Below the pieces are notes generated by a model that was given only the letters and a program-made list of their open reading frames with translations, did no database searches and was not told where the DNA came from. Below, piece after piece: positions 7,630 to 19,330 of a stretch of 64,000 bases of DNA. Source of the DNA: Takakia lepidozioides. Lineage: Eukaryota; Plantae; Bryophyta. Position numbers and translations under genes: made by a program. The first letter of the stretch is position 1. Every line of letters begins with the position of its first letter. The DNA lies in assembly GCA_030704615.1 (NCBI GenBank), contig CM060732.1, positions 43,276,001-43,340,000 of the forward strand, given 5' to 3'.

Positions 7630-7960
7630 GACCAGATGCTGGGGTGTGGAGAGCACGGGCACTGCTTGCTGCCTGCAGACTTCGTGATGATTTGGAGGTA
7701 GCAGAACATGCTTCAGACAACATTCTCAACAGGGATCCACAGCACCCTGCAGGTTATGTGTTGTATTTGAACATCAATGCCGCAGCTGGTAGGTGGGAGG
7801 ATAGTGCAAACGTGAGAAAACTGATGGAGGACATAGATGTCAAAGAGGAGCCAGGGCACAGCCGCATAGACATTGACAACCATCTGTAAACAATCGTCGT
7901 AGAGGACACATCACATCCACGAATTGAGGAAGTACATGGCGAGGTGAAGAGATTGTCTGT
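7630..7960 (+). pseudogene. PLS-PPR editing factor relic (E1-E2-PG box)
   Basis: PDAGVWR...ALLAACR...GYVLYLNINAAAGRWED...KEEPGHSRIDIDN, then a stop and VEDTSHP; no upstream PPR array or DYW core. Confidence 0.85.
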
Positions 7961-8381: not shown

Positions 8382-11205
8382 TTACCAATAATCCCCGCAA
8401 GAACACAGCCCATTCTTGAAGTGATGGAAGCGATTGGCATCCCTTGCGACAATTTCACGGCCAGCAATCTTGGAGATGAACTTGGTGGCAGTGTGGCAAT
8501 CACCACATACCCGAAGGTTCTTGATGATGCGTATAGGTGTCCCAGGGGGCGTGCTGATGAGTCCGAAGGAAATTGCGAGCTTTTCACTGTGATGGCAGAG
8601 AGCCTGTTCCTTAGTCTGCAGGTCCACATCATGTAAGACAAAGCGTGTGTCTGGCAAATATCCTGCCTCCTTTATCTGCATTGTTAATTGCTCCAACTCG
8701 GCATAGATTTGCACCGTTTGTGGGTGTGACTTATCTTCTACAAGAAATGTATGTACCCTGTTCTTGACCTCAATCCAGGTGCACCCTGGCTCTTTTTTCA
8801 CACCCTTCTCCTGCATTAATTTTCTAGTTTTTGCCACAGCCTCCCACGCGCCTGCGGCAGCATAAATGTTTGAAAGCAGCACATACACTGAAGCATTCTG
8901 TGGCTCCAATTTGAGAGCACCCTCTGCAGCACGTTCTGCAATATCCACATTACCATGGATTCTGCATGCACTGAGCAAGGCCCCCCAAACCGAAGTGTCT
9001 GGATCACATGGCATGTTATTGATGAGGTCTTCTGCTTCATCCAAGCACCCTGCACGGCCCAGAAGGTCAACGATACATCCATAGTGCTCCTGTGATGGGG
9101 TGATCTGATGAGCTTGACTCATGCAACCAAAATAGTGACGGCCTTCATCCACTAGCCCGACATGGCTGCATGCAGAGAGAACACCAATAAATGTGACACT
9201 GGTTGGCTTCACCCCTTCCCATTGCATTTTCTCAAAGTGTTGGAGGGCCTCATTACAATGCCCATTCTGGGCATAACCAACAATCATTGCATTCCACAAG
9301 ACCACATCTTGTTCAAGAGTACTGTCAAACACTTGCCGTGCATCCACCACACTCCCACACTTTGAATACATGTCAACGAGGGCACTCCCCACTTGTACAT
9401 CTGAGGCAGATCCAGCTTCAATGATGTGGGAATGGACAGACTTGCCCTCTTCCAGGGCTCCTACGCGGGCGCATGCATTCAAGATGCAGACAAAAGTAAC
9501 CTTGTCAGGCTCCACCCCTTCTCTTTGCATTTCCCGAAATAGTTTGAATGCCTCTCCTCCATGCCCTTCCTCAGCTTGTCCTCCAATCATCGCATTCCAT
9601 GAGACAACATTTCGTTTAGGCATTTCCAAGAACACCCTGTGTGCATCCACCAAACTCCCGCACTTCCAATACATGGTGATAAGCGCAGTCCCCACTCGAA
9701 CATCTGACTCAAATCCAGCTTTTGTGATGCTCATATGGAGCTGCTTACCCTGCTCCAAAGCCATTGGGGTTGCACATGCGCTGAGGATGCTCATGAAGGT
9801 GATCTTGTTTGGCTTGACACCTTCTTCTTGCATTTGCCGAAATACTTCAAAAGCCTCTGACCCATGCCCTTCCCGTGCAAGTCCTGTGATCATCACAGTC
9901 CATGAGATTACATCTCGCTTAGGCATTTTGTCAAACACTAGGCGTGCATCCACCACACTCCCACACTTGCAAAAGATGCTGAGCAGGGTATTCCCCATGC
10001 GGACATATGACTGGCAAGATAATGAAGCTGACCATGTTTCCCTCACGCATTTATCAAACACTTGCAGCGCATCCACCAAACTCCCGCACTTGCAGTACAT
10101 GTTGGCAAGGGCAGTCGCCACTTCAACATCTGACTCCAAACCAGCTTTGATAATGCCCGCATGGACTTGCTTGCCCTGCTCCAGAGCGGCTGAGCTGGCA
10201 CATGCACTGAGGATGCCAATGAAAGTGACCTTGTCTGCCTTCAGACCTTCTGATTGCATTTGCCAAAAAAGTTTCAAAGCTTCCTCACCATGACCATTCT
10301 GAGCAGATCCTGCAATCATTGCAGTCCATGAAACCACATTTCGCTCAGGCATTTTGTTAAAAGCTTGTCGCGCATCAACGATACTTCCGCATTTACAATA
10401 CATGTTGATAAGGGCAGTTCCCACTCGGACATCTGACTCAAATCCAGCTAAGATGATGAGCTCATGGAACCACTTGCCCTGTTCTAGATCTGCTGGGCTG
10501 ATACACACCTTCAGGATGCTAATGAAAGTGACTTTGTCAGGCTTCGATCCTTCTAGTTGCATTCTCAGAAAGAGTTCAACTGCCTCTGTACCATGCCCTC
10601 CCTGGGCAAGTCCTGCAATCATCGCAGTCCATGAGATCACGTTCCGTTTGGGCATTTGGTCAAACACTTTGTGCGCATCCACAACACTCCCGCACTTGCA
10701 ATACATGCTGACAAGTGTGTTTCCTAGGAAAATATCTGGCTCGAATCCACTTTGACAGATGTGGGCATGGACCCCCTTACCAACCGCCAGGGATTTAGCA
10801 CTAGCACACCCTTGCAAGAGACGAGCGCACGCGTCCGAATATGGTCCAAAGCCTCTTTGCTCCATAACATCCAGAATGTGCACTGCCTCCTTCAATCGTC
10901 CCTCCTTACACAACATGGTCACATCTCCATGATAATTTGTCATGTTCGTGGCCGTGCCACCACTCACACATTTGCCCCAACTCTGATGCCCCACAATCAT
11001 CTTGGTCTGATTCCAGACCTCCAGCCCCATCGGCCTGCATGAATATAATGCAAAAGATAAGTAGAAAGAAGTAACAGTTGATAAGGGTCTGGATCGATAT
11101 CCCCTCAACTCTTTGAAAGACAGATTTCTTGCTTGCATTCACAGTGGAAAAGACGGATAAAAGAAGAGCATACCAGGTGGTCCAAAGCAGCCTTTGGAAT
11201 TTCAT
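8382..11205 (-). CDS. PLS-class PPR protein with E1-E2-DYW (PG-type) cytidine deaminase; organellar C-to-U editing factor
   Basis: Regular P-L-S triplets; PG box PGCTWIEV, HSEKLA, CGDC and terminal DYW. Proposed exon 1 11205-11174 (MKFQRLLWTT) is spliced in phase 2 to 11034-8382. Confidence 0.95.
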
Positions 11206-11489: not shown

Positions 11490-11935
11490 GACGCATCGGA
11501 TATCTGGTGTTGGGCATATGTTGCAGCTGACCCCACCATCTGACCTTGAATTCATCTCGTCAGGAGCTTAAGGACGGAATGCCAAACTCACCCCGAACAG
11601 CCACATTGGCTGTTTTGGAGCATGCTGACATACACTCCTTAAGCACCCCCACTTGAATGGATTCTAGAGACTTAGCCTGGTTGGAGTTATCAACCCATAT
11701 AGCAGATCCGTACTCCAAGGCAGGTCTAATAACGCGACAAAGCATGATTTTCTTAACCCCAGAGTTGACCCCTCTGCAGTGGAAAAATTTAGTGAGCCCC
11801 AGAGCTTTGCCCTTGCCAGTTTGAACAACTTTCCGGATATGTGCATCCCAATTACAATTGGAGGAGAACTCAACGCCCAGGTAAGTGTAGGAAGGGAGGA
11901 CCGGGATCTCTTGGCTACCCCACTGCCACTTAACC
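11490..11935 (-). mobile_element. LINE ORF2 fragment (RT C-terminal/thumb region)
   Basis: YTYLGVEF...WDAHI...IRPALEYGSAIW...LESIQ...AVRGEFG, then TGA at 11560-11562 (likely ex-CGA) and RWW...MPNTRYP. Confidence 0.85.
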
Positions 11936-12429
11936 ATATGCAACGTGCGTGCCAAATTTGGGAGCGAACAGAATTCATTTGGACCCAAAACCACAGTTTC
12001 TTCCCTATTTTGCACTCCAAACTTGATTTGTGTTCAACTTTCATGCACTCTTCATAGAGAGTTCTGCAATAGTGAGCGGAGAGAACACTTTTTTTTTCGG
12101 GGCATGTTTTTATTGGTCCAGATTTTGGCGGGGGAGTAGTGGTGGGATGCTGGAAGCCGCAGAACAAAATTGAGCCAAAAACAAAATCGATACGTGCCAG
12201 AAACCCCCAATGAAAGGCAGTGCAAACCTATTTATTGGCTTAAAATTAATTTAAATTCAATTACATTATGGAATGGCTTGGTGTCGATGGGGAGGCAAAT
12301 GATTTATTCGTCTGTTGTGTCTCCGCACATGTGTCGCGCACATGCGGGGCAAAAGAGGGGCTTCAACCACATCCGTTCAATGGGTGCAATAGCCGCGCAC
12401 GCATCGCAGGATTTTTTTTCCGCAATGAA

Positions 12430-14911
12430 CAAAAACCAGATTCTTGTCATTACCACCACGGTGGTTTGAGTTTATTTCACTGTATAACTTGTCCCAGTAT
12501 AATTTCTTCTGAGACCTAACAAGCTGATTGATATCTTTACGGAGCTGGTAGTACCTCGCCCACAATTCTCTGTTGGTTCCAAATTGCAGCACTCTTTATA
12601 GAGGGCTCGTCTCTTAGCTATCTTGAGTTTAATCTCATTAGTCCACCAATTAACTGCTCTACCGCAGACAATTCGTTTCCTCCCAATGATCTTGTCAGCC
12701 ACGGAGGAAACGAAACTCTCCCAAGAGTCCACTGCTCTTTCGACTTCATTTCTTGCGTTAACAGAGCGTGACTGAAGTTCTTGGAGCGATTGGACAAAAT
12801 GAGGGAGAGCCTCTTGCAAGGCCTGGACGTACTCAGCCTTGACCTCCTCATTGTGGAATTTTTCTATGCGCCACTTCCGAATCGAACGTTTCACAGATCT
12901 CTTGGTGGTGGGAAAACACCTTTTGATCTCAGTCCAAACCAGGAAGTGGTCAGAGGTACCAATATCAGTTCTGTCGATCAACACATTGGCACACCGGGGG
13001 AACAAAATTTTGTCCATTATGATATAGTCCACAATGGAACGTTCCCCAGTTTGGGATTCCTCAGGAGTCCACTGCACTTGGTCACCACTTGTCCTGTTAT
13101 TCAAGGTCAAAAGCTGAAGCTCTTCTAGACAGTTAATTAACCGTCTGCCATTAGAATTCAGCTCGTCCTCACCAAAAGGTCCAATGATATTGTCCTGATG
13201 GATCCCTTTGCCCACCCGGGCATTGAAGTCCCCCAATAGTACCACCTGACCTTTGGCAAGGAACGAAGCACAGTCCAGCTTTACATCTTCGAAGGCCTTG
13301 TCTGCGTCAGCACTAAGGGTCCCCTCTGTGGGCATGTAAACACAACCAACAAAGAGGTCCTTTGTACTCATGCCGCCCTTCAAATTCAGTTTTAGCCAGA
13401 TACTATGCTCGTACCTCAAACCCTTGTTGATAATTTCACAATTGTCAAACAAGAAATCACGGACAAAGAATCCGACCCCTTTTTGACCGCGTTTGGCAGA
13501 GGCTGCCTTGAGAGTACACATCTTACCTGCCCATTTATAACCAATGACAACCAGTTTATCCGACGTTTCCCATGTTTCTTGCCCAGCACAGAAATGAATA
13601 TCATTAGTCCGAAGAACTTGTCCCACTTCAAGTTGTTTCCTTTGGTTGGTCAACCCTGAGAAGTTGAAAGTGGCCAGCCGCAAGCCAGCCCTTTGCGTGT
13701 GAATTGTTTGTCGTCTAGGTAGCTTGTGATTGCTCCTGGACGGCCAACCGTTCTGCAAAGGGGGGACAGTTACCCCATGTGTAGATTTTGCTCGTCTTGT
13801 GTAAACTTTGAGAATTGGTAAACCATTCAGGGTACCAAATCTTTCAGTTACACGACGCACAGGCTCCGCACACATAGGGGCAGATTGTCCGTCAGACTGC
13901 TTGGGGACAATTACCCCGTGTATAGATTTTGCTCGTCTTGTGTAGACTTTGAGGATTGGTAAACCATTTAGAGTACCAAATCCTTCAGTTACACGACGTT
14001 CAGGCTCTGCACACTTAGGGACAGATTGTCCATCTGACGGCTTGGGGACAATTACCCCGTGTATAGAATTTGTTCGTCTTGTGTAAACCTTGAGGATTGG
14101 TAAACCATTCAGAGTACCAAATCCTTCAGATTCAGGGCGTTCAGGTTCTGTACACTTAGGGGCATCTTGTCTTTCTGGCTGTTTGGATTCAACCTCATCC
14201 AGAGCATCAAACCGATTAGAAACTCTCAAGTTGAAGTTGTTGCCCTTGGTTGTCTTCCTAGAGCGCCCCATTGAATCACCAATGTCTAAGACCGCTCTCC
14301 AGCCAGTCAAGGGACGAACTTCTTTGAGATTGAATTGATGCGGGACTCTATTAGAAGCACTTTTGGTCATTGCAACCTTCAACGTACCCCTGTTATCAAG
14401 TCTCGAGATGGTACCATTAGCCATGAAATCCAAGCCTAAGCTAGAGCATGTAGTTTTAAAGGACACATCGTCCATCCTGGGATTCACCCCAAAAACTACA
14501 CATGAAGCCCTAGATTTGGCATAAGTAACCAATTCCCAGGGATCACCCTGAGGAGTGTTGATGTTGATAGGAGCTAAATTTTTGATTGTTTTCGCAGGCC
14601 ATAAGTTTAAGCACAGGAACCAACCCGAGCCCAAGTGCCGAGTATGCTAGACAGAGCATACGACTGCCCAATTTGGGCGGAGGGGCTGCCCCCAAGCGGT
14701 AGGAGTCCGCTTGTTACCATTCAGAGATCACACTCCAGGGAGTTGCAGGGAATGGCCCGTGTAGGCATATTCTAAAGAGGGAAAGGCCCCAAGCTTTCCA
14801 ACTAAATCCAATGCACTACCTTACCTGAAGCAAAGCGCTTCAGGTCGAAACAAACAAGGACACGAGGTCACAAGGCCGGCATTTAGTCACAGAGACATTA
14901 ATGTACTCCCG

Positions 14912-14975: not shown

Positions 14976-15662
14976 TACTCATAAGACGATGTTTGCCGTA
15001 GCCTTGTGGCCCTTGACCCCGCGCCCAGTTTGAGCGGAAACCAAAGGGACAGAACCTACCTCTGTCAGGGGCTGACATTGGTAGTAAGACTTACCTTTAT
15101 ACAAAGAATTGATTCGGGTTTTCCAGATATCCTCTAGAAATCCCTTCACACAAATCTGCTGTGTGATTTGCCCAAAAACTAGGCCTCAGAAGGGCCTGGG
15201 CTTTTGGCTCAGCCTCGAGACTTTCAAAGTTGGTAAACAGAGGTACAGGCACAATTCTCTTGATAGATTGGAGGAGAGCTTCTCTCTGGTGAGAATACCC
15301 CGGACAGTGAATCAGAAAATGAATATTGTCTTCGGGTTGCCCACACAACGGGCAATCGCACTCCCCTTCCTGCCCTGAGTTTAAATTCAGTCTAGTGCCG
15401 AGAGTGGGTAGACCCTTGAGGTCATTCATGATATCCTCCCCCATGTCACAGTCTGGAAACAGGTTCAGGGAAGTTTTCTGCCTAACTTCATTTTCATCGG
15501 ACAATTTTCTGGTAACAGACATGGCTTTGGACACTACAGTCTCAGAGTCAGATTTAGCCAGCAAGGTCAAGACTTGCAGGTCCAGATTCAGATCCTTGAG
15601 AATCTCTTCTACCCTCTTCTGCCAGGACTCAGCCTGTTTGACAGGGCGGTCCTGTTTCGAAG

Positions 15663-15665
<3 letters not shown>
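14915..15665 (-). mobile_element. 5'-truncated LINE copy (C-terminal CCHC-type zinc finger, ORF end, (TC)n tail)
   Basis: CPLCGQPEDNIHFLIHCPGY; terminal GRGVKGHKATANIVL* followed within ~6 nt by (TC)~29. Confidence 0.85.

Positions 15666-15666
<1 letters not shown>

Positions 15667-15693
<27 letters not shown>
15667..15693. repeat. (GA/TC)~13 microsatellite
   Basis: Direct inspection. Confidence 0.97.
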
Positions 15694-15749
15694 GTGTTTA
15701 TTTAGCGGAAAGCCTGACCCAGGTCGATTAAAAAGTCTATGTCGAAGGA

Positions 15750-18700
15750 ATGAGCATAGAACAACTGTGGCAGGAGTTCTTTGCAAGTCCTTTACAGTGG
15801 TGGGACAACAGGTTTGATAAGGTAAGGCCATCCTCATGCAAATGTGAAAAGTTTGTCAAGGAGGGCTTGCCACTGACGCCGGCATGATAATGTTCTGTGG
15901 ACTGGATTGTATGTCCAGGTTGCGATGCCCGCTCAGCTGCCTATTGGTGTTATTCACAGAAGAGTCCAAGATCACCAGACTTCAGGCATAAGCACACAAA
16001 CGAGTCCTTCTGATTGAGGAACGGCCAAATCCTCCTTGGGTGAAGGCTAAGCTATCTGCTATGATACAACGTCGGGTTGGTTGTAATGTTGCTGCCCATG
16101 ATCGAGCTCCAGGCCTAGAATACAATGGGTACTGCTTTGATATGGGTCAAATTGATAGAATTGGTACAGTTTTCTATGGTAGTAATTTTGTGTCCCTGAT
16201 AATATGCAGCAAAAAGCCTATCCTTATGCAGAGATGTTTCTTTCAAGTATCTAGGAGCTTGGGATATCTGATGTGTGGTTAACTGAAAAATTGGGTTTGT
16301 AACGTTCAGGTTTGACTCGTGCAGGATAGAAGGGTTAAATCAGGCCCAGTTGTTTGTGGGACATCAGACTTGTGGCAGGCCTAGTACCTCTACCATCCCC
16401 ACTGTTTTTGGAAGAGGACCAAGACAGACAGTCAACGAGAATTCTTCTTGCACTTGCATTGATGTGAAGACACTATGCAAGGCAGGACGACTGCAAGATG
16501 CTCTGCACATTTTGAATAAAAAAGGCTTCCGGGTAGACTCCGGTACTTATGTGAGTTTCTTGCAGGAGTGCATCAACATGAAGGATCTATCAAAGGGAAA
16601 GCAGGTGCACGCCCACATCATTCAAAATGGATTTAGGCCAAACATCTTTCTACTCAACACCCTTGTCAACATTGTATGAACGAATGCATCAGGAAGGAGT
16701 GACACCTGACATTTGCGTTCTCAATGCATGTGCCAGTCTAGGAGTCCTGGAAAAGAGCAAAGCAGTCCATTCTGACATCGTTAAAGCTGGAATTGCACCA
16801 GATATCATTCTCGAGACTGCCCTTGTTGGCATGTATGCCAAATGTAGGAGCATGAAGGATGCTCGTCAAGTGTTCGACAACATGGCTAAACGAGATGTGG
16901 TCTCATGGAACGCAATGATTACTGGATATGCTCAGCATGGGTATGCTAGGGAGGCTCTGGAGATCTATGAAGAAATGATGTGGGAAGGGGTCATACCAAA
17001 CAATGTGACATTCCTTTGTGCTCTCAATGCGTGTGCCACCTTAGGAACCCTGCAAAGAGGTAAAAAAGTCCATTCTGACATCCTCAAGCGGGGAATTGCA
17101 CCAGACATCATTTTAGAGAATACCCTTGTAGACATGTATGCCAAGTGCAAGAGTACTGAGGATGCACGGCGAGTGTTTGACAATATGGTTCAACGGGATG
17201 TGGTCTCGTGGAATTCAATGATCACAGGATATGCTCAGCATGGATGTGGTTGGGAGGCAGTCAAGATCTATGAGCAAATGCAACGGGAAAGGGTGACCCT
17301 TGACAAGGTGACATTCATTGGTATTCTCACCGCATGTGCCAGTTCAGGAGCCCTGGAAAAGGGCAAAGAGGTCCATGCTGACATCCTAAACACTGGAATG
17401 GCGCCGGATATAATGCTGGAGACTGCCCTTGCTGATATGTATGCCAAATGTGGGAGCATAAAGGATGCCCGTCAAGTGTTTGAGAAAATGGTTCAACGGA
17501 ATGTGGTCTCGTGGAGTGTAATGATCGCAGGGTATGCCCAGCATGGGTTTGGTAGGGAGGCTTTAGAGATCTTCGATCAGATGATACAGGAAGGGGTGAA
17601 GCCCAACAAGGTGACATTCATTTGCGTCCTCAATGCTTGCAGCAGCCTAGGAGCCCTGGAGAAGGGCCAACAGGTCCATGCAGACATTGTGAAAGCTGGC
17701 TTTGTTCCAGATATCATTCTGGAGACTGCTCTTGCTGATATGTATGCAAAATGCAATAGCATAAAGGATGCACGTCGTGTGTTTGACAATATGGCTCAGC
17801 GAGATGTGGGTTCATGGAATGTGATCATTGCAGGATATTGTCAGCATGGGTGCGGCAGGGAGTCTTTCGAGGTTTATGAGCAAATGCAAGGGGAAGGGGT
17901 GATGCCTGACAAGGTAACGTTCGTTTGTATTCTGCATGCGTGCGCCAGCCTAGGAGCTCTGGAGAAGGGCAGGGAAATCCATGCTGCCATCATCAAAGCT
18001 GTTATTGGGCCCGATGTCGTTCTGGAGTCTGCCCTTGCTGACATGTATGCCAAATGTGGAAGTGTACAGGATGCACGTCATGTGTTTGACAATATGGCTC
18101 GGCGAGATGTGGTTTCATGGAGCTCAATGATTGGTGGATATGCTCAGCACGGGTGTGGTAGGGAGGCTTTGGAGCTCTATGAACAAATGACAAAGGAAGG
18201 GGTGATTTGTGACAAGTTGACGTTTATCTGCGTTCTCAATGCATGTGCCAGCCTGTCGGCCCTGGAGAAGGGCAAGGGGGTCCATGCTGACATTATCAGA
18301 GCTACAGTTACACCAGATATCGTTCTTGAGACTGCCCTTGTTGATATGTATGCCAAATGTGGGAGTTTGGAGGATGCACGTCAAGTTTTCAACAACATGA
18401 CGAGATGTGGTGTCATGGAATGCACTGATTGCAGGATATTCTCAGCATGGGTGTGGTAGGGAGGTCCTCCAACTATTTGAGCAAATGCAGCAAGAAGATC
18501 TGAAATTGGACGGTACCACCTTTATATGTCTGCTCTATGCATGTAGCCATGTGGGCCTAGTGGATGAAGGTCACCACTACTTCGATTCCATGAGTCAAGA
18601 TCATGGCCTCCCTCCTACTGTGGGGCATTTCAGCTGCATGGTGGATCTTCTCAGCCGTGGAGGTAAATTGGATGATGCAGAAGACTTCATCAACAGAATG

Positions 18701-19330
18701 CCAATTGAACCAGATGCTTCAGTGTGGGGGGCCTTGCTTGGTGCCTGTAGGATTCATGGCGATGTGGAGCGGGCAGAACATGTGGCAAAATCCCTTATGA
18801 AGTCGGATCCACAGCATGCGCCGACTTATGTGCTGCTATCAAACATCTATGCTGCAGCTGGCAGGTGGGATGATAAAGAAAAGGTGAGAAAAATGATGAA
18901 GGAGAGAGGTGTGAGAAAGGAGCCAGGACACAGCAGCATTGAGGTTGACAACCAGGTGCATACGTTTGTAGTAGAAGACAAAACGCATCCACAAATTGAG
19001 GAAATCTATGCTGAGCTCAAAAGATTGTCTGGGCAGTTGAAGGAGGCCGGGTACATTCCGGATACTCGCTGTGTATTACATGATATAGAGGAGGAGCGAA
19101 AGAAGATTTCTCTTGGTCACCATAGTGAGAGGCTTGCCATTGCTTTTGGGCTCATCAGTACTCCCCCCAGAAAGCCTATCCGGATCATCAAGAACCTTCG
19201 GGTATGTGGTGACTGCCATACCGCCACCAAGTTCATCTCGAAGATTGTTGAGCGAGCAATTGTTGTACGGGATGCCACCTGCTTTCACCACTTCCAAGAT
19301 GGGGGTTGCTCTTGTGGGGATTACTGGTGA
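15750..19330 (+). pseudogene. PLS-PPR-E-DYW editing factor with an N-terminal OSB-type PDF motif; disrupted
   Basis: Exons 15750-15821 (MSIEQLWQEFFASPLQWWDNRFDK), 15960-16128 (KSPRSPDFRHKHTNESF*L...NPPWVKAKL) and 16310-19330 (PLS array, E, DYW with HSE/CGDC/DYW). TGA at 16011; frameshifts at about 16020, 16670 and 18400. Confidence 0.85.

What the first reader, a model, noticed from the sequence alone, without database searches (positions are those of the whole stretch)
15750..19330. OSB-type PDF single-stranded nucleic-acid-binding motif spliced onto a PLS-PPR-DYW deaminase
Seen: two small exons largely missed by the ORF track (15750-15821 and 15960-16128) have canonical GT-AG sites. They translate to LWQEFFASPLQWWDNRFDK|KSPRSPDFRHKHTNESF(W>stop)L...NPPWVKAKL. 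A phase-2 intron (16129-16309) joins them in frame to the PLS-E-DYW exon. Established: W..FF.NP.EWWDNR..K.NP..PDFKHK.TGEALWL is the PDF motif of plant organellar ssDNA-binding OSB proteins, and PLS-DYW proteins are organellar RNA C-to-U editors. Inference: this is a chimeric editor joining an ssDNA/nucleoid-binding module to a programmable deaminase, perhaps for co-transcriptional or nucleoid-tethered editing, or action on ssDNA. The neighbouring paralog (8382-11205) shares the N-terminal NQxxxxVGHQ segment but lacks the PDF exons, which points to exon shuffling. This copy is decayed. I cannot rule out that such fusions exist unremarked in other non-seed plants.
Basis: partly seen in the sequence, partly recalled or inferred. 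Interest (0 to 1): 0.82.

Follow-up and report, generated by a model that had tools for sequence, protein, structure and literature searches.

The report
Decayed PPR-DYW editing gene with PDF module
This is a broken copy of a plant organelle RNA-editing gene (PPR-DYW type) that carries the small "PDF" module of the single-stranded-DNA-binding OSB proteins at its front; intact genes of this build are common in seed-free plants, and I found no paper describing it.

Summary
Two small GT-AG-bounded exons (15750-15821, 15960-16128) encode one OSB-type PDF motif. A profile built only from OSB proteins ranks their three reading-frame pieces first among 3216 pieces of the window (E 3.7e-10, 4e-4, 0.05), in colinear order.

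They lie in frame with a downstream PLS-E-DYW exon, and the whole locus aligns colinearly with annotated Diphasiastrum complanatum PDF-PPR-DYW proteins.

The architecture is real elsewhere:
- All 120 listed long proteins with a PDF motif are PPR proteins, from about 87 D. complanatum loci, Sphagnum and the liverwort Calypogeia. An Adiantum fern protein with the same build came from an earlier search.
- 45 of them have a complete DYW deaminase.
- The Adiantum gene is a single uninterrupted ORF.

The phase-0 intron inside the PDF motif sits at the same codon in PPR genes of a clubmoss, a moss and a liverwort, and in true OSB genes of two liverworts. That points to an ancient transfer of OSB exons, not a local event.

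This copy is a pseudogene: a stop and a 1-nt deletion in the PDF, a roughly 50-codon deletion, a 5-nt deletion, no 5' exon, and a LINE fragment just upstream.

What the PDF module does in a PPR protein is untested. RNA reads could not be obtained. Earlier agents of this scan reported the same architecture at other loci of this genome.

The parts
15750..15821 (+). PDF exon a: first half of the PDF motif (…LWQEFF…WWDNRFDK), ending in phase 0
   Evidence: Sequence. OSB-only PDF HMM E 3.7e-10, positions 2-27. PPR-type PDF HMM 40.2 bits against 33.2 bits for the OSB type.
15822..15959 (+). Intron 1 (GT…AG, phase 0), inside the PDF motif
   Evidence: Same codon position and phase as in the D. complanatum gene L002, the Calypogeia PPR gene L003, the Sphagnum-like contig L001, and the OSB genes L004 and L005.
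15960..16128 (+). PDF exon b: second half of the PDF motif plus linker. Broken by TGA at 16011-13 (at the nearly invariant Trp) and by a 1-nt loss in an A-run at about 16025-27.
   Evidence: Sequence. HMM pieces at E 4e-4 and 0.05, colinear. tblastn HSPs in two frames.
16129..16324 (+). Intron 2 (GT at 16129, phase 2). The latter resembles the …catgcag|G acceptor of the D. complanatum gene and of the neighbouring paralog.
   Evidence: Sequence. L002 has a phase-2 intron at the same place between PDF linker and PPR exon. Reading straight through instead hits a stop at 16280-82.
16325..16679 (+). Start of the large exon: N-terminal linker (…NQ….VGHQ…) and the first PPR motifs. It ends at a deletion of roughly 50 codons with a frame change, with TGA at 16677-79.
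   Evidence: Pfam PPR hits. 37% identity to the neighbour's N-terminus, E 3e-14. tblastn frame switch at 16669-16673.
16627..18406 (+). PLS-class PPR array, read in a second frame. It ends at a deletion of about 5 nt near 18400-18406.
   Evidence: Pfam PPR_2 E 3.4e-93. 47-53% identity to D. complanatum PDF-PPR proteins.
18401..19330 (+). Last PPR motifs, E motif (18755-18943), E+ (18956-19027) and DYW deaminase (19049-19327), read in a third frame. The HSE…CGDCH…CSCGDYW signature is intact.
   Evidence: Pfam E_motif 2.3e-20, Eplus 9.6e-9, DYW_deaminase 2.8e-41. 60% identity to P0031 and P0064 C-termini.
15097..15700 (-). Antisense retroelement-like fragment (my reading of the ORF; Pfam finds nothing) with a (GA)n run at about 15670-15695, ending about 50 nt upstream of exon a. 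No transit-peptide exon or further PDF exon is detectable upstream.
   Evidence: ORF list, with its Pfam scan blank. The adjacent ORF at 12475-14634 carries an endonuclease domain, E 2e-6. tblastn with N-termini of five PDF-PPR proteins finds nothing upstream of 15693.
8382..11138 (-). Neighbouring intact PLS-E-DYW paralog without PDF exons, head to head with this gene (context only).
   Evidence: 918-aa ORF. Pfam PPR, E, E+ and DYW, E 7.3e-45. No PDF hit on this strand.

Best explanation
The locus is a pseudogene copy of a real, old and large gene family: organelle C-to-U RNA-editing factors of the PLS-E-DYW PPR class that carry one to three OSB-type PDF modules at the N-terminus.

Gene structure (shown): PDF exon a, a phase-0 intron, PDF exon b plus linker, a phase-2 intron, then one large PPR-E-DYW exon.

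How intact members probably work (inferred):
- The PLS array reads the RNA upstream of the target C and the DYW domain deaminates it, as in other DYW editing factors.
- PPR arrays bind RNA in parallel, N-terminus towards the 5' end. The PDF module therefore sits 5' of the PPR footprint.
- There it most likely acts as a sequence-independent clamp on single-stranded nucleic acid. It would raise affinity or keep the site unfolded, or hold the factor at single-stranded DNA of the nucleoid.

Origin (inferred): the PDF exons came from the two 3' exons of an OSB gene before liverworts, mosses and vascular plants diverged.

This copy cannot make the protein.
For: Motif identity: an OSB-only HMM hits the three pieces colinearly. 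The PDF region of the D. complanatum PPR protein P0075 hits proteins named OSB1, OSB2 or OSB3 and carrying PF00436 at E 1e-16 to 1e-29, and unnamed PF00436 proteins down to 7e-42.

One gene: D. complanatum PDF-PPR-DYW proteins align colinearly from 15756 to 19327.

Family:
- 13 of the 120 best PPR homologs carry the motif.
- All 120 listed proteins of 579-1386 aa with a PDF are PPR proteins; 29 have two or three PDFs, and 45 have HxE…CxxCH and a DYW-like end.
- The Adiantum gene is 3009 nt for 1002 aa, so it has no intron.
- Sphagnum fallax and relatives carry the same build.

Introns: the position and phase inside the PDF motif are identical in L001, L002, L003 and the window, and in the OSB genes L004 and L005. 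L002 also shares the phase-2 intron after the PDF.

PDF tree: the PPR and OSB labels need only 2 changes over 162 rows, against a shuffled mean of about 55.

Fold: AlphaFold2 pLDDT 92, a compact helix, small sheet, helix module.

ssDNA binding by the PDF motif is reported in PMC6963530 and PMC4166229, both citing Zaegel 2006.

Pseudogene: lesions seen.
Against: - The splice junctions rest on homology.
- The linker after intron 2 is about 45 residues longer than in D. complanatum and resembles the PDF-less neighbour. A rearranged junction is therefore not excluded.
- OSB proteins were reported to prefer ssDNA over RNA (PMC4166229), so an RNA-clamp role is not implied by precedent.
- No function of a PDF module in any PPR protein has been tested.
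- The D. complanatum and Calypogeia gene models are annotations whose transcript support I could not inspect.
Confidence: 0.85

Rival explanations
1. Chimeric junk: the PDF exons and the PPR body come from two different gene copies (one PDF-bearing, one PDF-less like the neighbour). Rearrangement or transposon capture put them side by side, so they were never one working gene at this locus.
For: The exon-3 N-terminus matches the PDF-less neighbour (37% identity, E 3e-14) and has about 45 extra residues relative to D. complanatum PDF-PPR proteins. A retroelement-like fragment abuts exon a. An unchecked scan note reports a Pack-CACTA carrying PPR, PDF and DYW modules elsewhere in this genome.
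Against: The order, strand, frame and both intron positions and phases match an annotated D. complanatum gene. The acceptor context …cgtgcag|G is shared with that gene. Linkers in this family vary in length in any case.
Confidence: 0.09
2. A separate OSB pseudogene fragment that merely lies upstream of an ordinary PPR-DYW gene.
For: The motif also scores against an OSB-only profile, and the best identity of exon a to OSB and to PPR-type PDFs is equal, 17 of 24.
Against: There is no OB-fold or SSB remnant anywhere in the window. The three pieces together score higher on the PPR-type PDF profile (74 against 58 bits). The linker and phase-2 donor after the PDF match PPR genes, whereas in the two liverwort OSB genes mapped here the protein ends about 20 residues after the motif. 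Hundreds of PDF-PPR genes exist.
Confidence: 0.03
3. A still-functional gene whose apparent lesions are assembly or sequencing errors.
For: One lesion is a 1-nt loss in a homopolymer. The DYW catalytic signature is intact.
Against: There are at least four independent lesions, including a deletion of about 50 codons, a 5-nt deletion and a TGG-to-TGA change. The 5' exon is missing.
Confidence: 0.03

Closest known systems
[quoted passage not shown]
   Same: The roughly 55-residue PDF motif, with the same nearly invariant W, P, WWD.R, K, PDF.HK, LW and P.W positions, present in one to three copies. The same phase-0 intron splits the motif after …R..K.
   Different: OSB proteins have an SSB-like OB-fold (PF00436) with the PDFs at the C-terminal end. 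Here there is no OB-fold, the PDF is N-terminal, and it is followed by a PLS PPR array and a DYW deaminase.
PLS-E-DYW pentatricopeptide repeat RNA-editing factors (for example the Physcomitrium DYW-type PpPPR proteins)
   Same: PLS repeat array, E1/E2 and E+ motifs, and a DYW cytidine deaminase with HxE and CxxCH, ending in …CSCGDYW.
   Different: An extra N-terminal PDF module encoded by two small upstream exons. The accessory domains listed for PPR proteins in a 2022 review are RRM, LAGLIDADG, SMR, NYN, CBS and SAP, not PDF (PMC9459714).
Diphasiastrum complanatum O6H91_10G000700 (P0315, locus L002) and about 87 sister loci; Sphagnum fallax BDL97_09G079500; Calypogeia fissa P0356; Adiantum capillus-veneris GOP47_0015052 (P0069)
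   Same: The same domain order, and in D. complanatum the same two intron positions and phases. PDF exon a is about 70% identical.
   Different: Those are intact annotated genes, most with a transit-peptide exon and often a second or third PDF. The window copy has one PDF, no 5' exon and several disabling lesions. The databases call them hypothetical or uncharacterised.

Membership tests
PLS-E-DYW PPR editing factor | Array of P/L/S pentatricopeptide repeats | tested here: met
   Pfam PPR_2 E 3.4e-93 and PPR E 5.9e-87 on the 610-aa piece.
PLS-E-DYW PPR editing factor | E and E+ motifs followed by a DYW deaminase with the HxE and CxxCH zinc signature | tested here: met
   E_motif 2.3e-20, Eplus 9.6e-9, DYW_deaminase 2.8e-41. 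HSE…CGDCH…CSCGDYW read directly.
PLS-E-DYW PPR editing factor | Continuous reading frame able to give a full-length protein | tested here: not met
   Stop at 16011-13; frame changes at about 16025, about 16675 (with stop 16677-79) and about 18400.
PLS-E-DYW PPR editing factor | Organelle transit peptide and site-specific C-to-U editing activity | not testable with these tools
   No 5' exon was found.
OSB family | PDF motif | tested here: met
   OSB-only HMM, three colinear pieces, best E 3.7e-10.
OSB family | SSB-like OB-fold domain (PF00436) N-terminal to the PDF | tested here: not met
   tblastn with the parts of four OSB proteins N-terminal to their regex-detected WWD.R motif finds no OB-fold-coding sequence in the window. 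The single hit is a PDF repeat retained in one query. Pfam finds none either. The locus is therefore not an OSB gene.
PDF-PLS-(E/DYW) PPR subfamily (unnamed; defined here from database proteins) | PDF motif or motifs N-terminal to the PLS array on the same strand and in a joinable frame | tested here: met
   Colinear tblastn with P0031, P0064, P0094 and P0315.
PDF-PLS-(E/DYW) PPR subfamily (unnamed; defined here from database proteins) | Phase-0 intron inside the PDF after …R..K, and in the one clubmoss gene mapped (L002) a phase-2 intron between PDF linker and PPR exon | tested here: met
   Window junctions against L001, L002 and L003.
PDF-PLS-(E/DYW) PPR subfamily (unnamed; defined here from database proteins) | Exons actually spliced together in RNA at this locus | not testable with these tools

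The most novel reading that the evidence does not exclude
PDF-PLS-DYW proteins form an undescribed, ancient class of organelle editing factors, found in liverworts, mosses, clubmosses and ferns and not seen in seed plants in my searches. They arose when the two 3' exons of an OSB gene were placed in front of a PPR gene. The one to three PDF modules are functional single-strand binders that give these editors a property ordinary PPR-DYW factors lack: anchoring at nucleoid ssDNA or nascent RNA, or extra non-specific affinity 5' of the PPR footprint.
Probability: 0.4. Interest if true: 0.7.

Novelty: new variant of a known kind. Interest (0 to 1): 0.5.

Why it matters
PPR-DYW proteins are the programmable RNA editors of plant organelles and are being engineered as base editors. 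An accessory single-strand-binding module that nature has attached to about 87 of them in one clubmoss alone, and kept since before the bryophyte and vascular-plant split, should tell something about how editing sites are found or held open. It could also be a useful add-on for synthetic editors.

The finding also widens the role of the PDF motif, which so far is known only from OSB DNA-maintenance proteins.

This particular locus adds little by itself. It is a dead copy, useful mainly as one more dated member of the family and as a record of the conserved exon structure.

Tried and rejected
- Pfam has no PDF model, so exons a and b give no family hit.
Each exon or frame piece was searched on its own by reference.
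- The look-up of encoding contigs found no record for P0031, P0094, P0064 or P0095. The Adiantum locus came back without DNA. P0315, P0356, P0158 and P0223 worked.
- The neighbour's 918-aa ORF is not in the protein collection as an exact sequence, so the organism was not identified. The closest proteins are from D. complanatum, at 50-56% identity over the PPR body.
- A PDF profile against PDB sequences gave no hit at E up to 1. Foldseek against the PDB gave nothing at E 0.001 or better. VIA-align wide gave a best Z of 3.6, which is noise. No known fold can be assigned.
- Literature: no paper combines 'PDF motif' with pentatricopeptide in a relevant way, and 'WWDNR' and the other term sets gave nothing relevant. 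Zaegel 2006 is not held. Subscription papers such as large PPR surveys could not be searched, so 'undescribed' is provisional.
- The big representative-protein search was not used, because the word search settled the question and that library has no taxon names.
- A second PDF or a transit-peptide exon upstream was looked for and not found.
Full report
**1. What is in the sequence**

- Exon a (15750-15821) opens with ATG and encodes 24 residues ending …WWDNRFDK. GT follows at 15822.
- AG at 15958-9 precedes exon b (15960-16128), which reads KSPRSPDFRHK…ESF and then TGA (16011-13).
- Five codons later the motif continues (NPPWVKAKL…) in the next frame. This fits one base lost from an A-run at about 16025-27.
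- GT at 16129 and AG at 16308-9 join in phase 2 to the frame of the PPR ORF that starts near 16310.
- A second AG at 16323-4 is also phase-2 compatible, being 15 nt further on.
- Reading straight through the proposed intron 2 meets a stop at 16280-82.
- Downstream, Pfam finds PPR repeats (E 3.4e-93), the E motif, the E+ motif and a DYW deaminase (E 2.8e-41). It has no model for the upstream exons.

**2. Is the small motif really the OSB PDF motif?**

I took the PDF region of a Diphasiastrum complanatum PPR protein that turned up as a homolog (P0075) and searched proteins of OSB size. It hit proteins that NCBI and UniProt name OSB1, OSB2 or OSB3 and that carry the SSB domain PF00436, at E 1e-16 to 1e-29. 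Unnamed PF00436 proteins scored down to 7e-42.

From 115 of those hits that have no PPR repeats I cut 141 PDF segments, built an HMM and searched all 3216 stop-to-stop pieces of the six frames of the window. The best three pieces were exactly the three pieces of the proposed motif, in order:

| Piece | HMM positions | E-value |
|---|---|---|
| 15732-15884 | 2-27 | 3.7e-10 |
| 15891-16010 | 21-38 | 4.1e-4 |
| 15992-16279 | 36-54 | 0.048 |

Nothing else in the window came close. Of the 14 positions that are at least 90% conserved in an alignment of 146 PDF segments, the window keeps 12. The two lost are the Leu-Trp pair, where Leu is now Phe and Trp is now the stop. The exons were searched one by one, and the joined peptide was never built.

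**3. Do the PDF exons belong to the PPR gene?**

A word search with the 610-aa PPR piece returned PLS proteins of clubmosses, ferns and gymnosperms. D. complanatum gave the highest identities (50-56%). Thirteen of the 120 best hits carry an N-terminal PDF motif.

tblastn of six of them on the window gives one colinear chain:
- PDF at 15756-16010 and 16028-16129;
- N-terminal region at 16344-16673;
- PPR array at 16669-18399;
- last repeats, E and DYW at 18401-19327.

The chain runs in four successive frames.

For one intact D. complanatum gene (P0315, 822 aa, with DYW) the DNA was available (L002). Mapping the protein on it gives four exons:
- a transit-peptide exon;
- a small exon ending …WWDNRLTK, followed by GT;
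- an exon starting KSPKHPDFKHK after AG and ending in a split codon (cg|gtatgg);
- the large PPR-E-DYW exon, after …catgcag|G.

The window has the same phase-0 intron at the same codon of the motif, and a phase-2 intron at the same place between PDF linker and PPR exon. Its sequence …cgtgcag|G at 16318-16325 looks like the L002 acceptor, and like the probable acceptor of the neighbouring paralog (…catgcag|G). The true acceptor may therefore be 16323-4 rather than 16308-9. Both keep the frame.

**4. How common is the architecture?**

I searched the PDF region of P0054 against proteins of 576-1832 aa, which is too long for OSBs. It found 125 proteins, 120 of them listed.
- All 120 have a PDF by the OSB-derived HMM and all have PPR repeats.
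- 91 have one PDF, 23 have two and 6 have three, always near the N-terminus. The exception is P0277, which looks like a merged gene model.
- 53 have a DYW domain, and 45 have HxE…CxxCH and a DYW-like end.
- 91 rows, or about 87 locus tags, are from D. complanatum. The rest are from Sphagnum species, the leafy liverwort Calypogeia fissa and unnamed environmental contigs.
- No seed plant is among the rows listed.
- Cluster look-ups tie two unnamed hits to Sphagnum fallax genes.

Adiantum capillus-veneris P0069 has the motif too. Its gene range is 3009 nt for 1002 residues, so PDF and PPR lie in one uninterrupted ORF. That is independent of any splice prediction.

Source names are 'hypothetical', 'uncharacterized', 'pentatricopeptide repeat' or 'DYW domain-containing'. 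None mentions OSB or PDF.

**5. Origin**

The intron inside the PDF motif is at the identical codon and phase in five places:
- the window;
- D. complanatum (L002);
- Calypogeia PPR gene L003 (…WWDHRLEK | GSLRYPDFKHK);
- a Sphagnum-like contig L001 (…WWDHRSEK | ANAKYPDFKHK);
- two true OSB genes, Calypogeia L004 and Marchantia L005 (…WWDNRDTK | RNPKAPDFKHK and …WWDNRFNK | KNPKAPDFKHK).

In those OSB genes these are the last two exons. In the liverwort and moss PPR genes the second PDF exon runs on into the PPR ORF without a further intron.

A maximum-likelihood tree of 165 PDF segments is poorly resolved, with only 62 columns. Even so, it separates PPR-borne from OSB-borne motifs with only 2 label changes, against about 55 when labels are shuffled. 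One or very few captures are therefore enough to explain the pattern.

Together this supports genomic exon shuffling from an OSB gene before liverworts, mosses and vascular plants diverged. The PDF-less neighbour in the window says nothing about that event.

**6. State of this copy**

The lesions are these:
- TGA in place of the nearly invariant Trp of the PDF (16011-13).
- A 1-nt loss about 14 nt later.
- At about 16670-16680, the motif …NTLVN runs straight into …YERMHQEG…. This means roughly 50 codons are missing, with a frame change and a stop at 16677-79.
- About four codons are missing just after that.
- At about 18400-18406, only one base stands where two codons precede …RDVVSW, so 5 nt are lost and the frame shifts.

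No transit-peptide exon and no further PDF exon is found upstream. A retroelement-like fragment on the other strand, with a (GA)n run, ends about 50 nt before exon a. The DYW signature itself is intact, but the gene cannot give a full protein. I treat it as a pseudogene.

**7. What the module may do**

AlphaFold2 on the PDF alignment gives a confident compact model: mean pLDDT 92 and pTM 0.79, with a helix, a small sheet and a second helix. It has no convincing relative among solved structures:
- no sequence hit;
- Foldseek nothing at E 0.001 or better;
- best VIA-align Z of 3.6.

Reviews state that the PDF motif of AtOSB1 is sufficient for ssDNA binding, and that OSB1 and OSB2 prefer ssDNA to dsDNA or RNA (PMC6963530 and PMC4166229, citing Zaegel 2006, which I could not read).

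PPR tracts bind RNA with their N-terminus towards the 5' end, which is established knowledge. An N-terminal PDF would therefore sit upstream of the recognised stretch. My best guess is a sequence-independent single-strand clamp that adds affinity or keeps the site open. Tethering to nucleoid ssDNA is the main alternative. None of this is tested.

**8. Known or new?**

I found no paper that links PDF or OSB motifs with PPR proteins. A 2022 review of moss PPR proteins lists RRM, LAGLIDADG, SMR, NYN, CBS and SAP as accessory domains, not PDF. Subscription journals are not covered, so this is provisional.

Earlier agents of this scan reached the same conclusion at other loci of the same genome, and two of them report intact, transcribed copies. 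I did not check those loci, and their notes are not independent evidence.

**9. Verdict**

The architecture is a new variant of a known kind: a PLS-DYW editor plus a known module. It is present but unnamed in public proteomes. This locus is a decayed member of that family.

Noticed in passing
window 11037-11205 (- strand): The intact neighbour probably also has an upstream intron. A pyrimidine tract and …catgcag|G precede …PMGLEVWNQ…, and a short ORF starting at ATG 11205 ends at a GT (…acc tg|gtatgc) in the matching phase 2. The ATG at 11138 taken by the ORF finder may therefore not be the real start.
   Followed up: partly
window 11560-14634 (- strand): LINE-like element between the two PPR genes. 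It has a 720-aa ORF with an endonuclease domain (Pfam Exo_endo_phos, E 2e-6). On the + strand, three near-identical short ORFs start at 13808, 13949 and 14090, which points to a 141-nt tandem repeat.
   Followed up: partly
window 7644-7889 (+ strand): A short ORF that by eye looks like an isolated E-motif fragment of another PPR gene (…YVLYLNINAAAGRWED…KEEPGHSRIDIDN…), probably a further pseudogene piece.
   Followed up: no
P0279, P0281, P0278, P0280, P0282 (D. complanatum proteins): These PPR proteins carry three tandem PDF motifs, like the multi-PDF OSB3 and OSB4 type. P0277 has a second PDF at residues 680-733 and is probably two tandem genes merged in one model.
   Followed up: partly
L003 and L004 (Calypogeia fissa), L005 (Marchantia polymorpha): The leafy liverwort Calypogeia has both PDF-PPR-DYW genes and an OSB gene. 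For Marchantia only the OSB gene turned up in my searches.
   Followed up: no
model mc137239480f0 (PDF motif of P0315, residues 135-200): The PDF motif folds with high confidence (pLDDT 92) into a small helix-sheet-helix unit that has no clear match in the PDB. A solved structure would be new for OSB proteins as well.
   Followed up: partly
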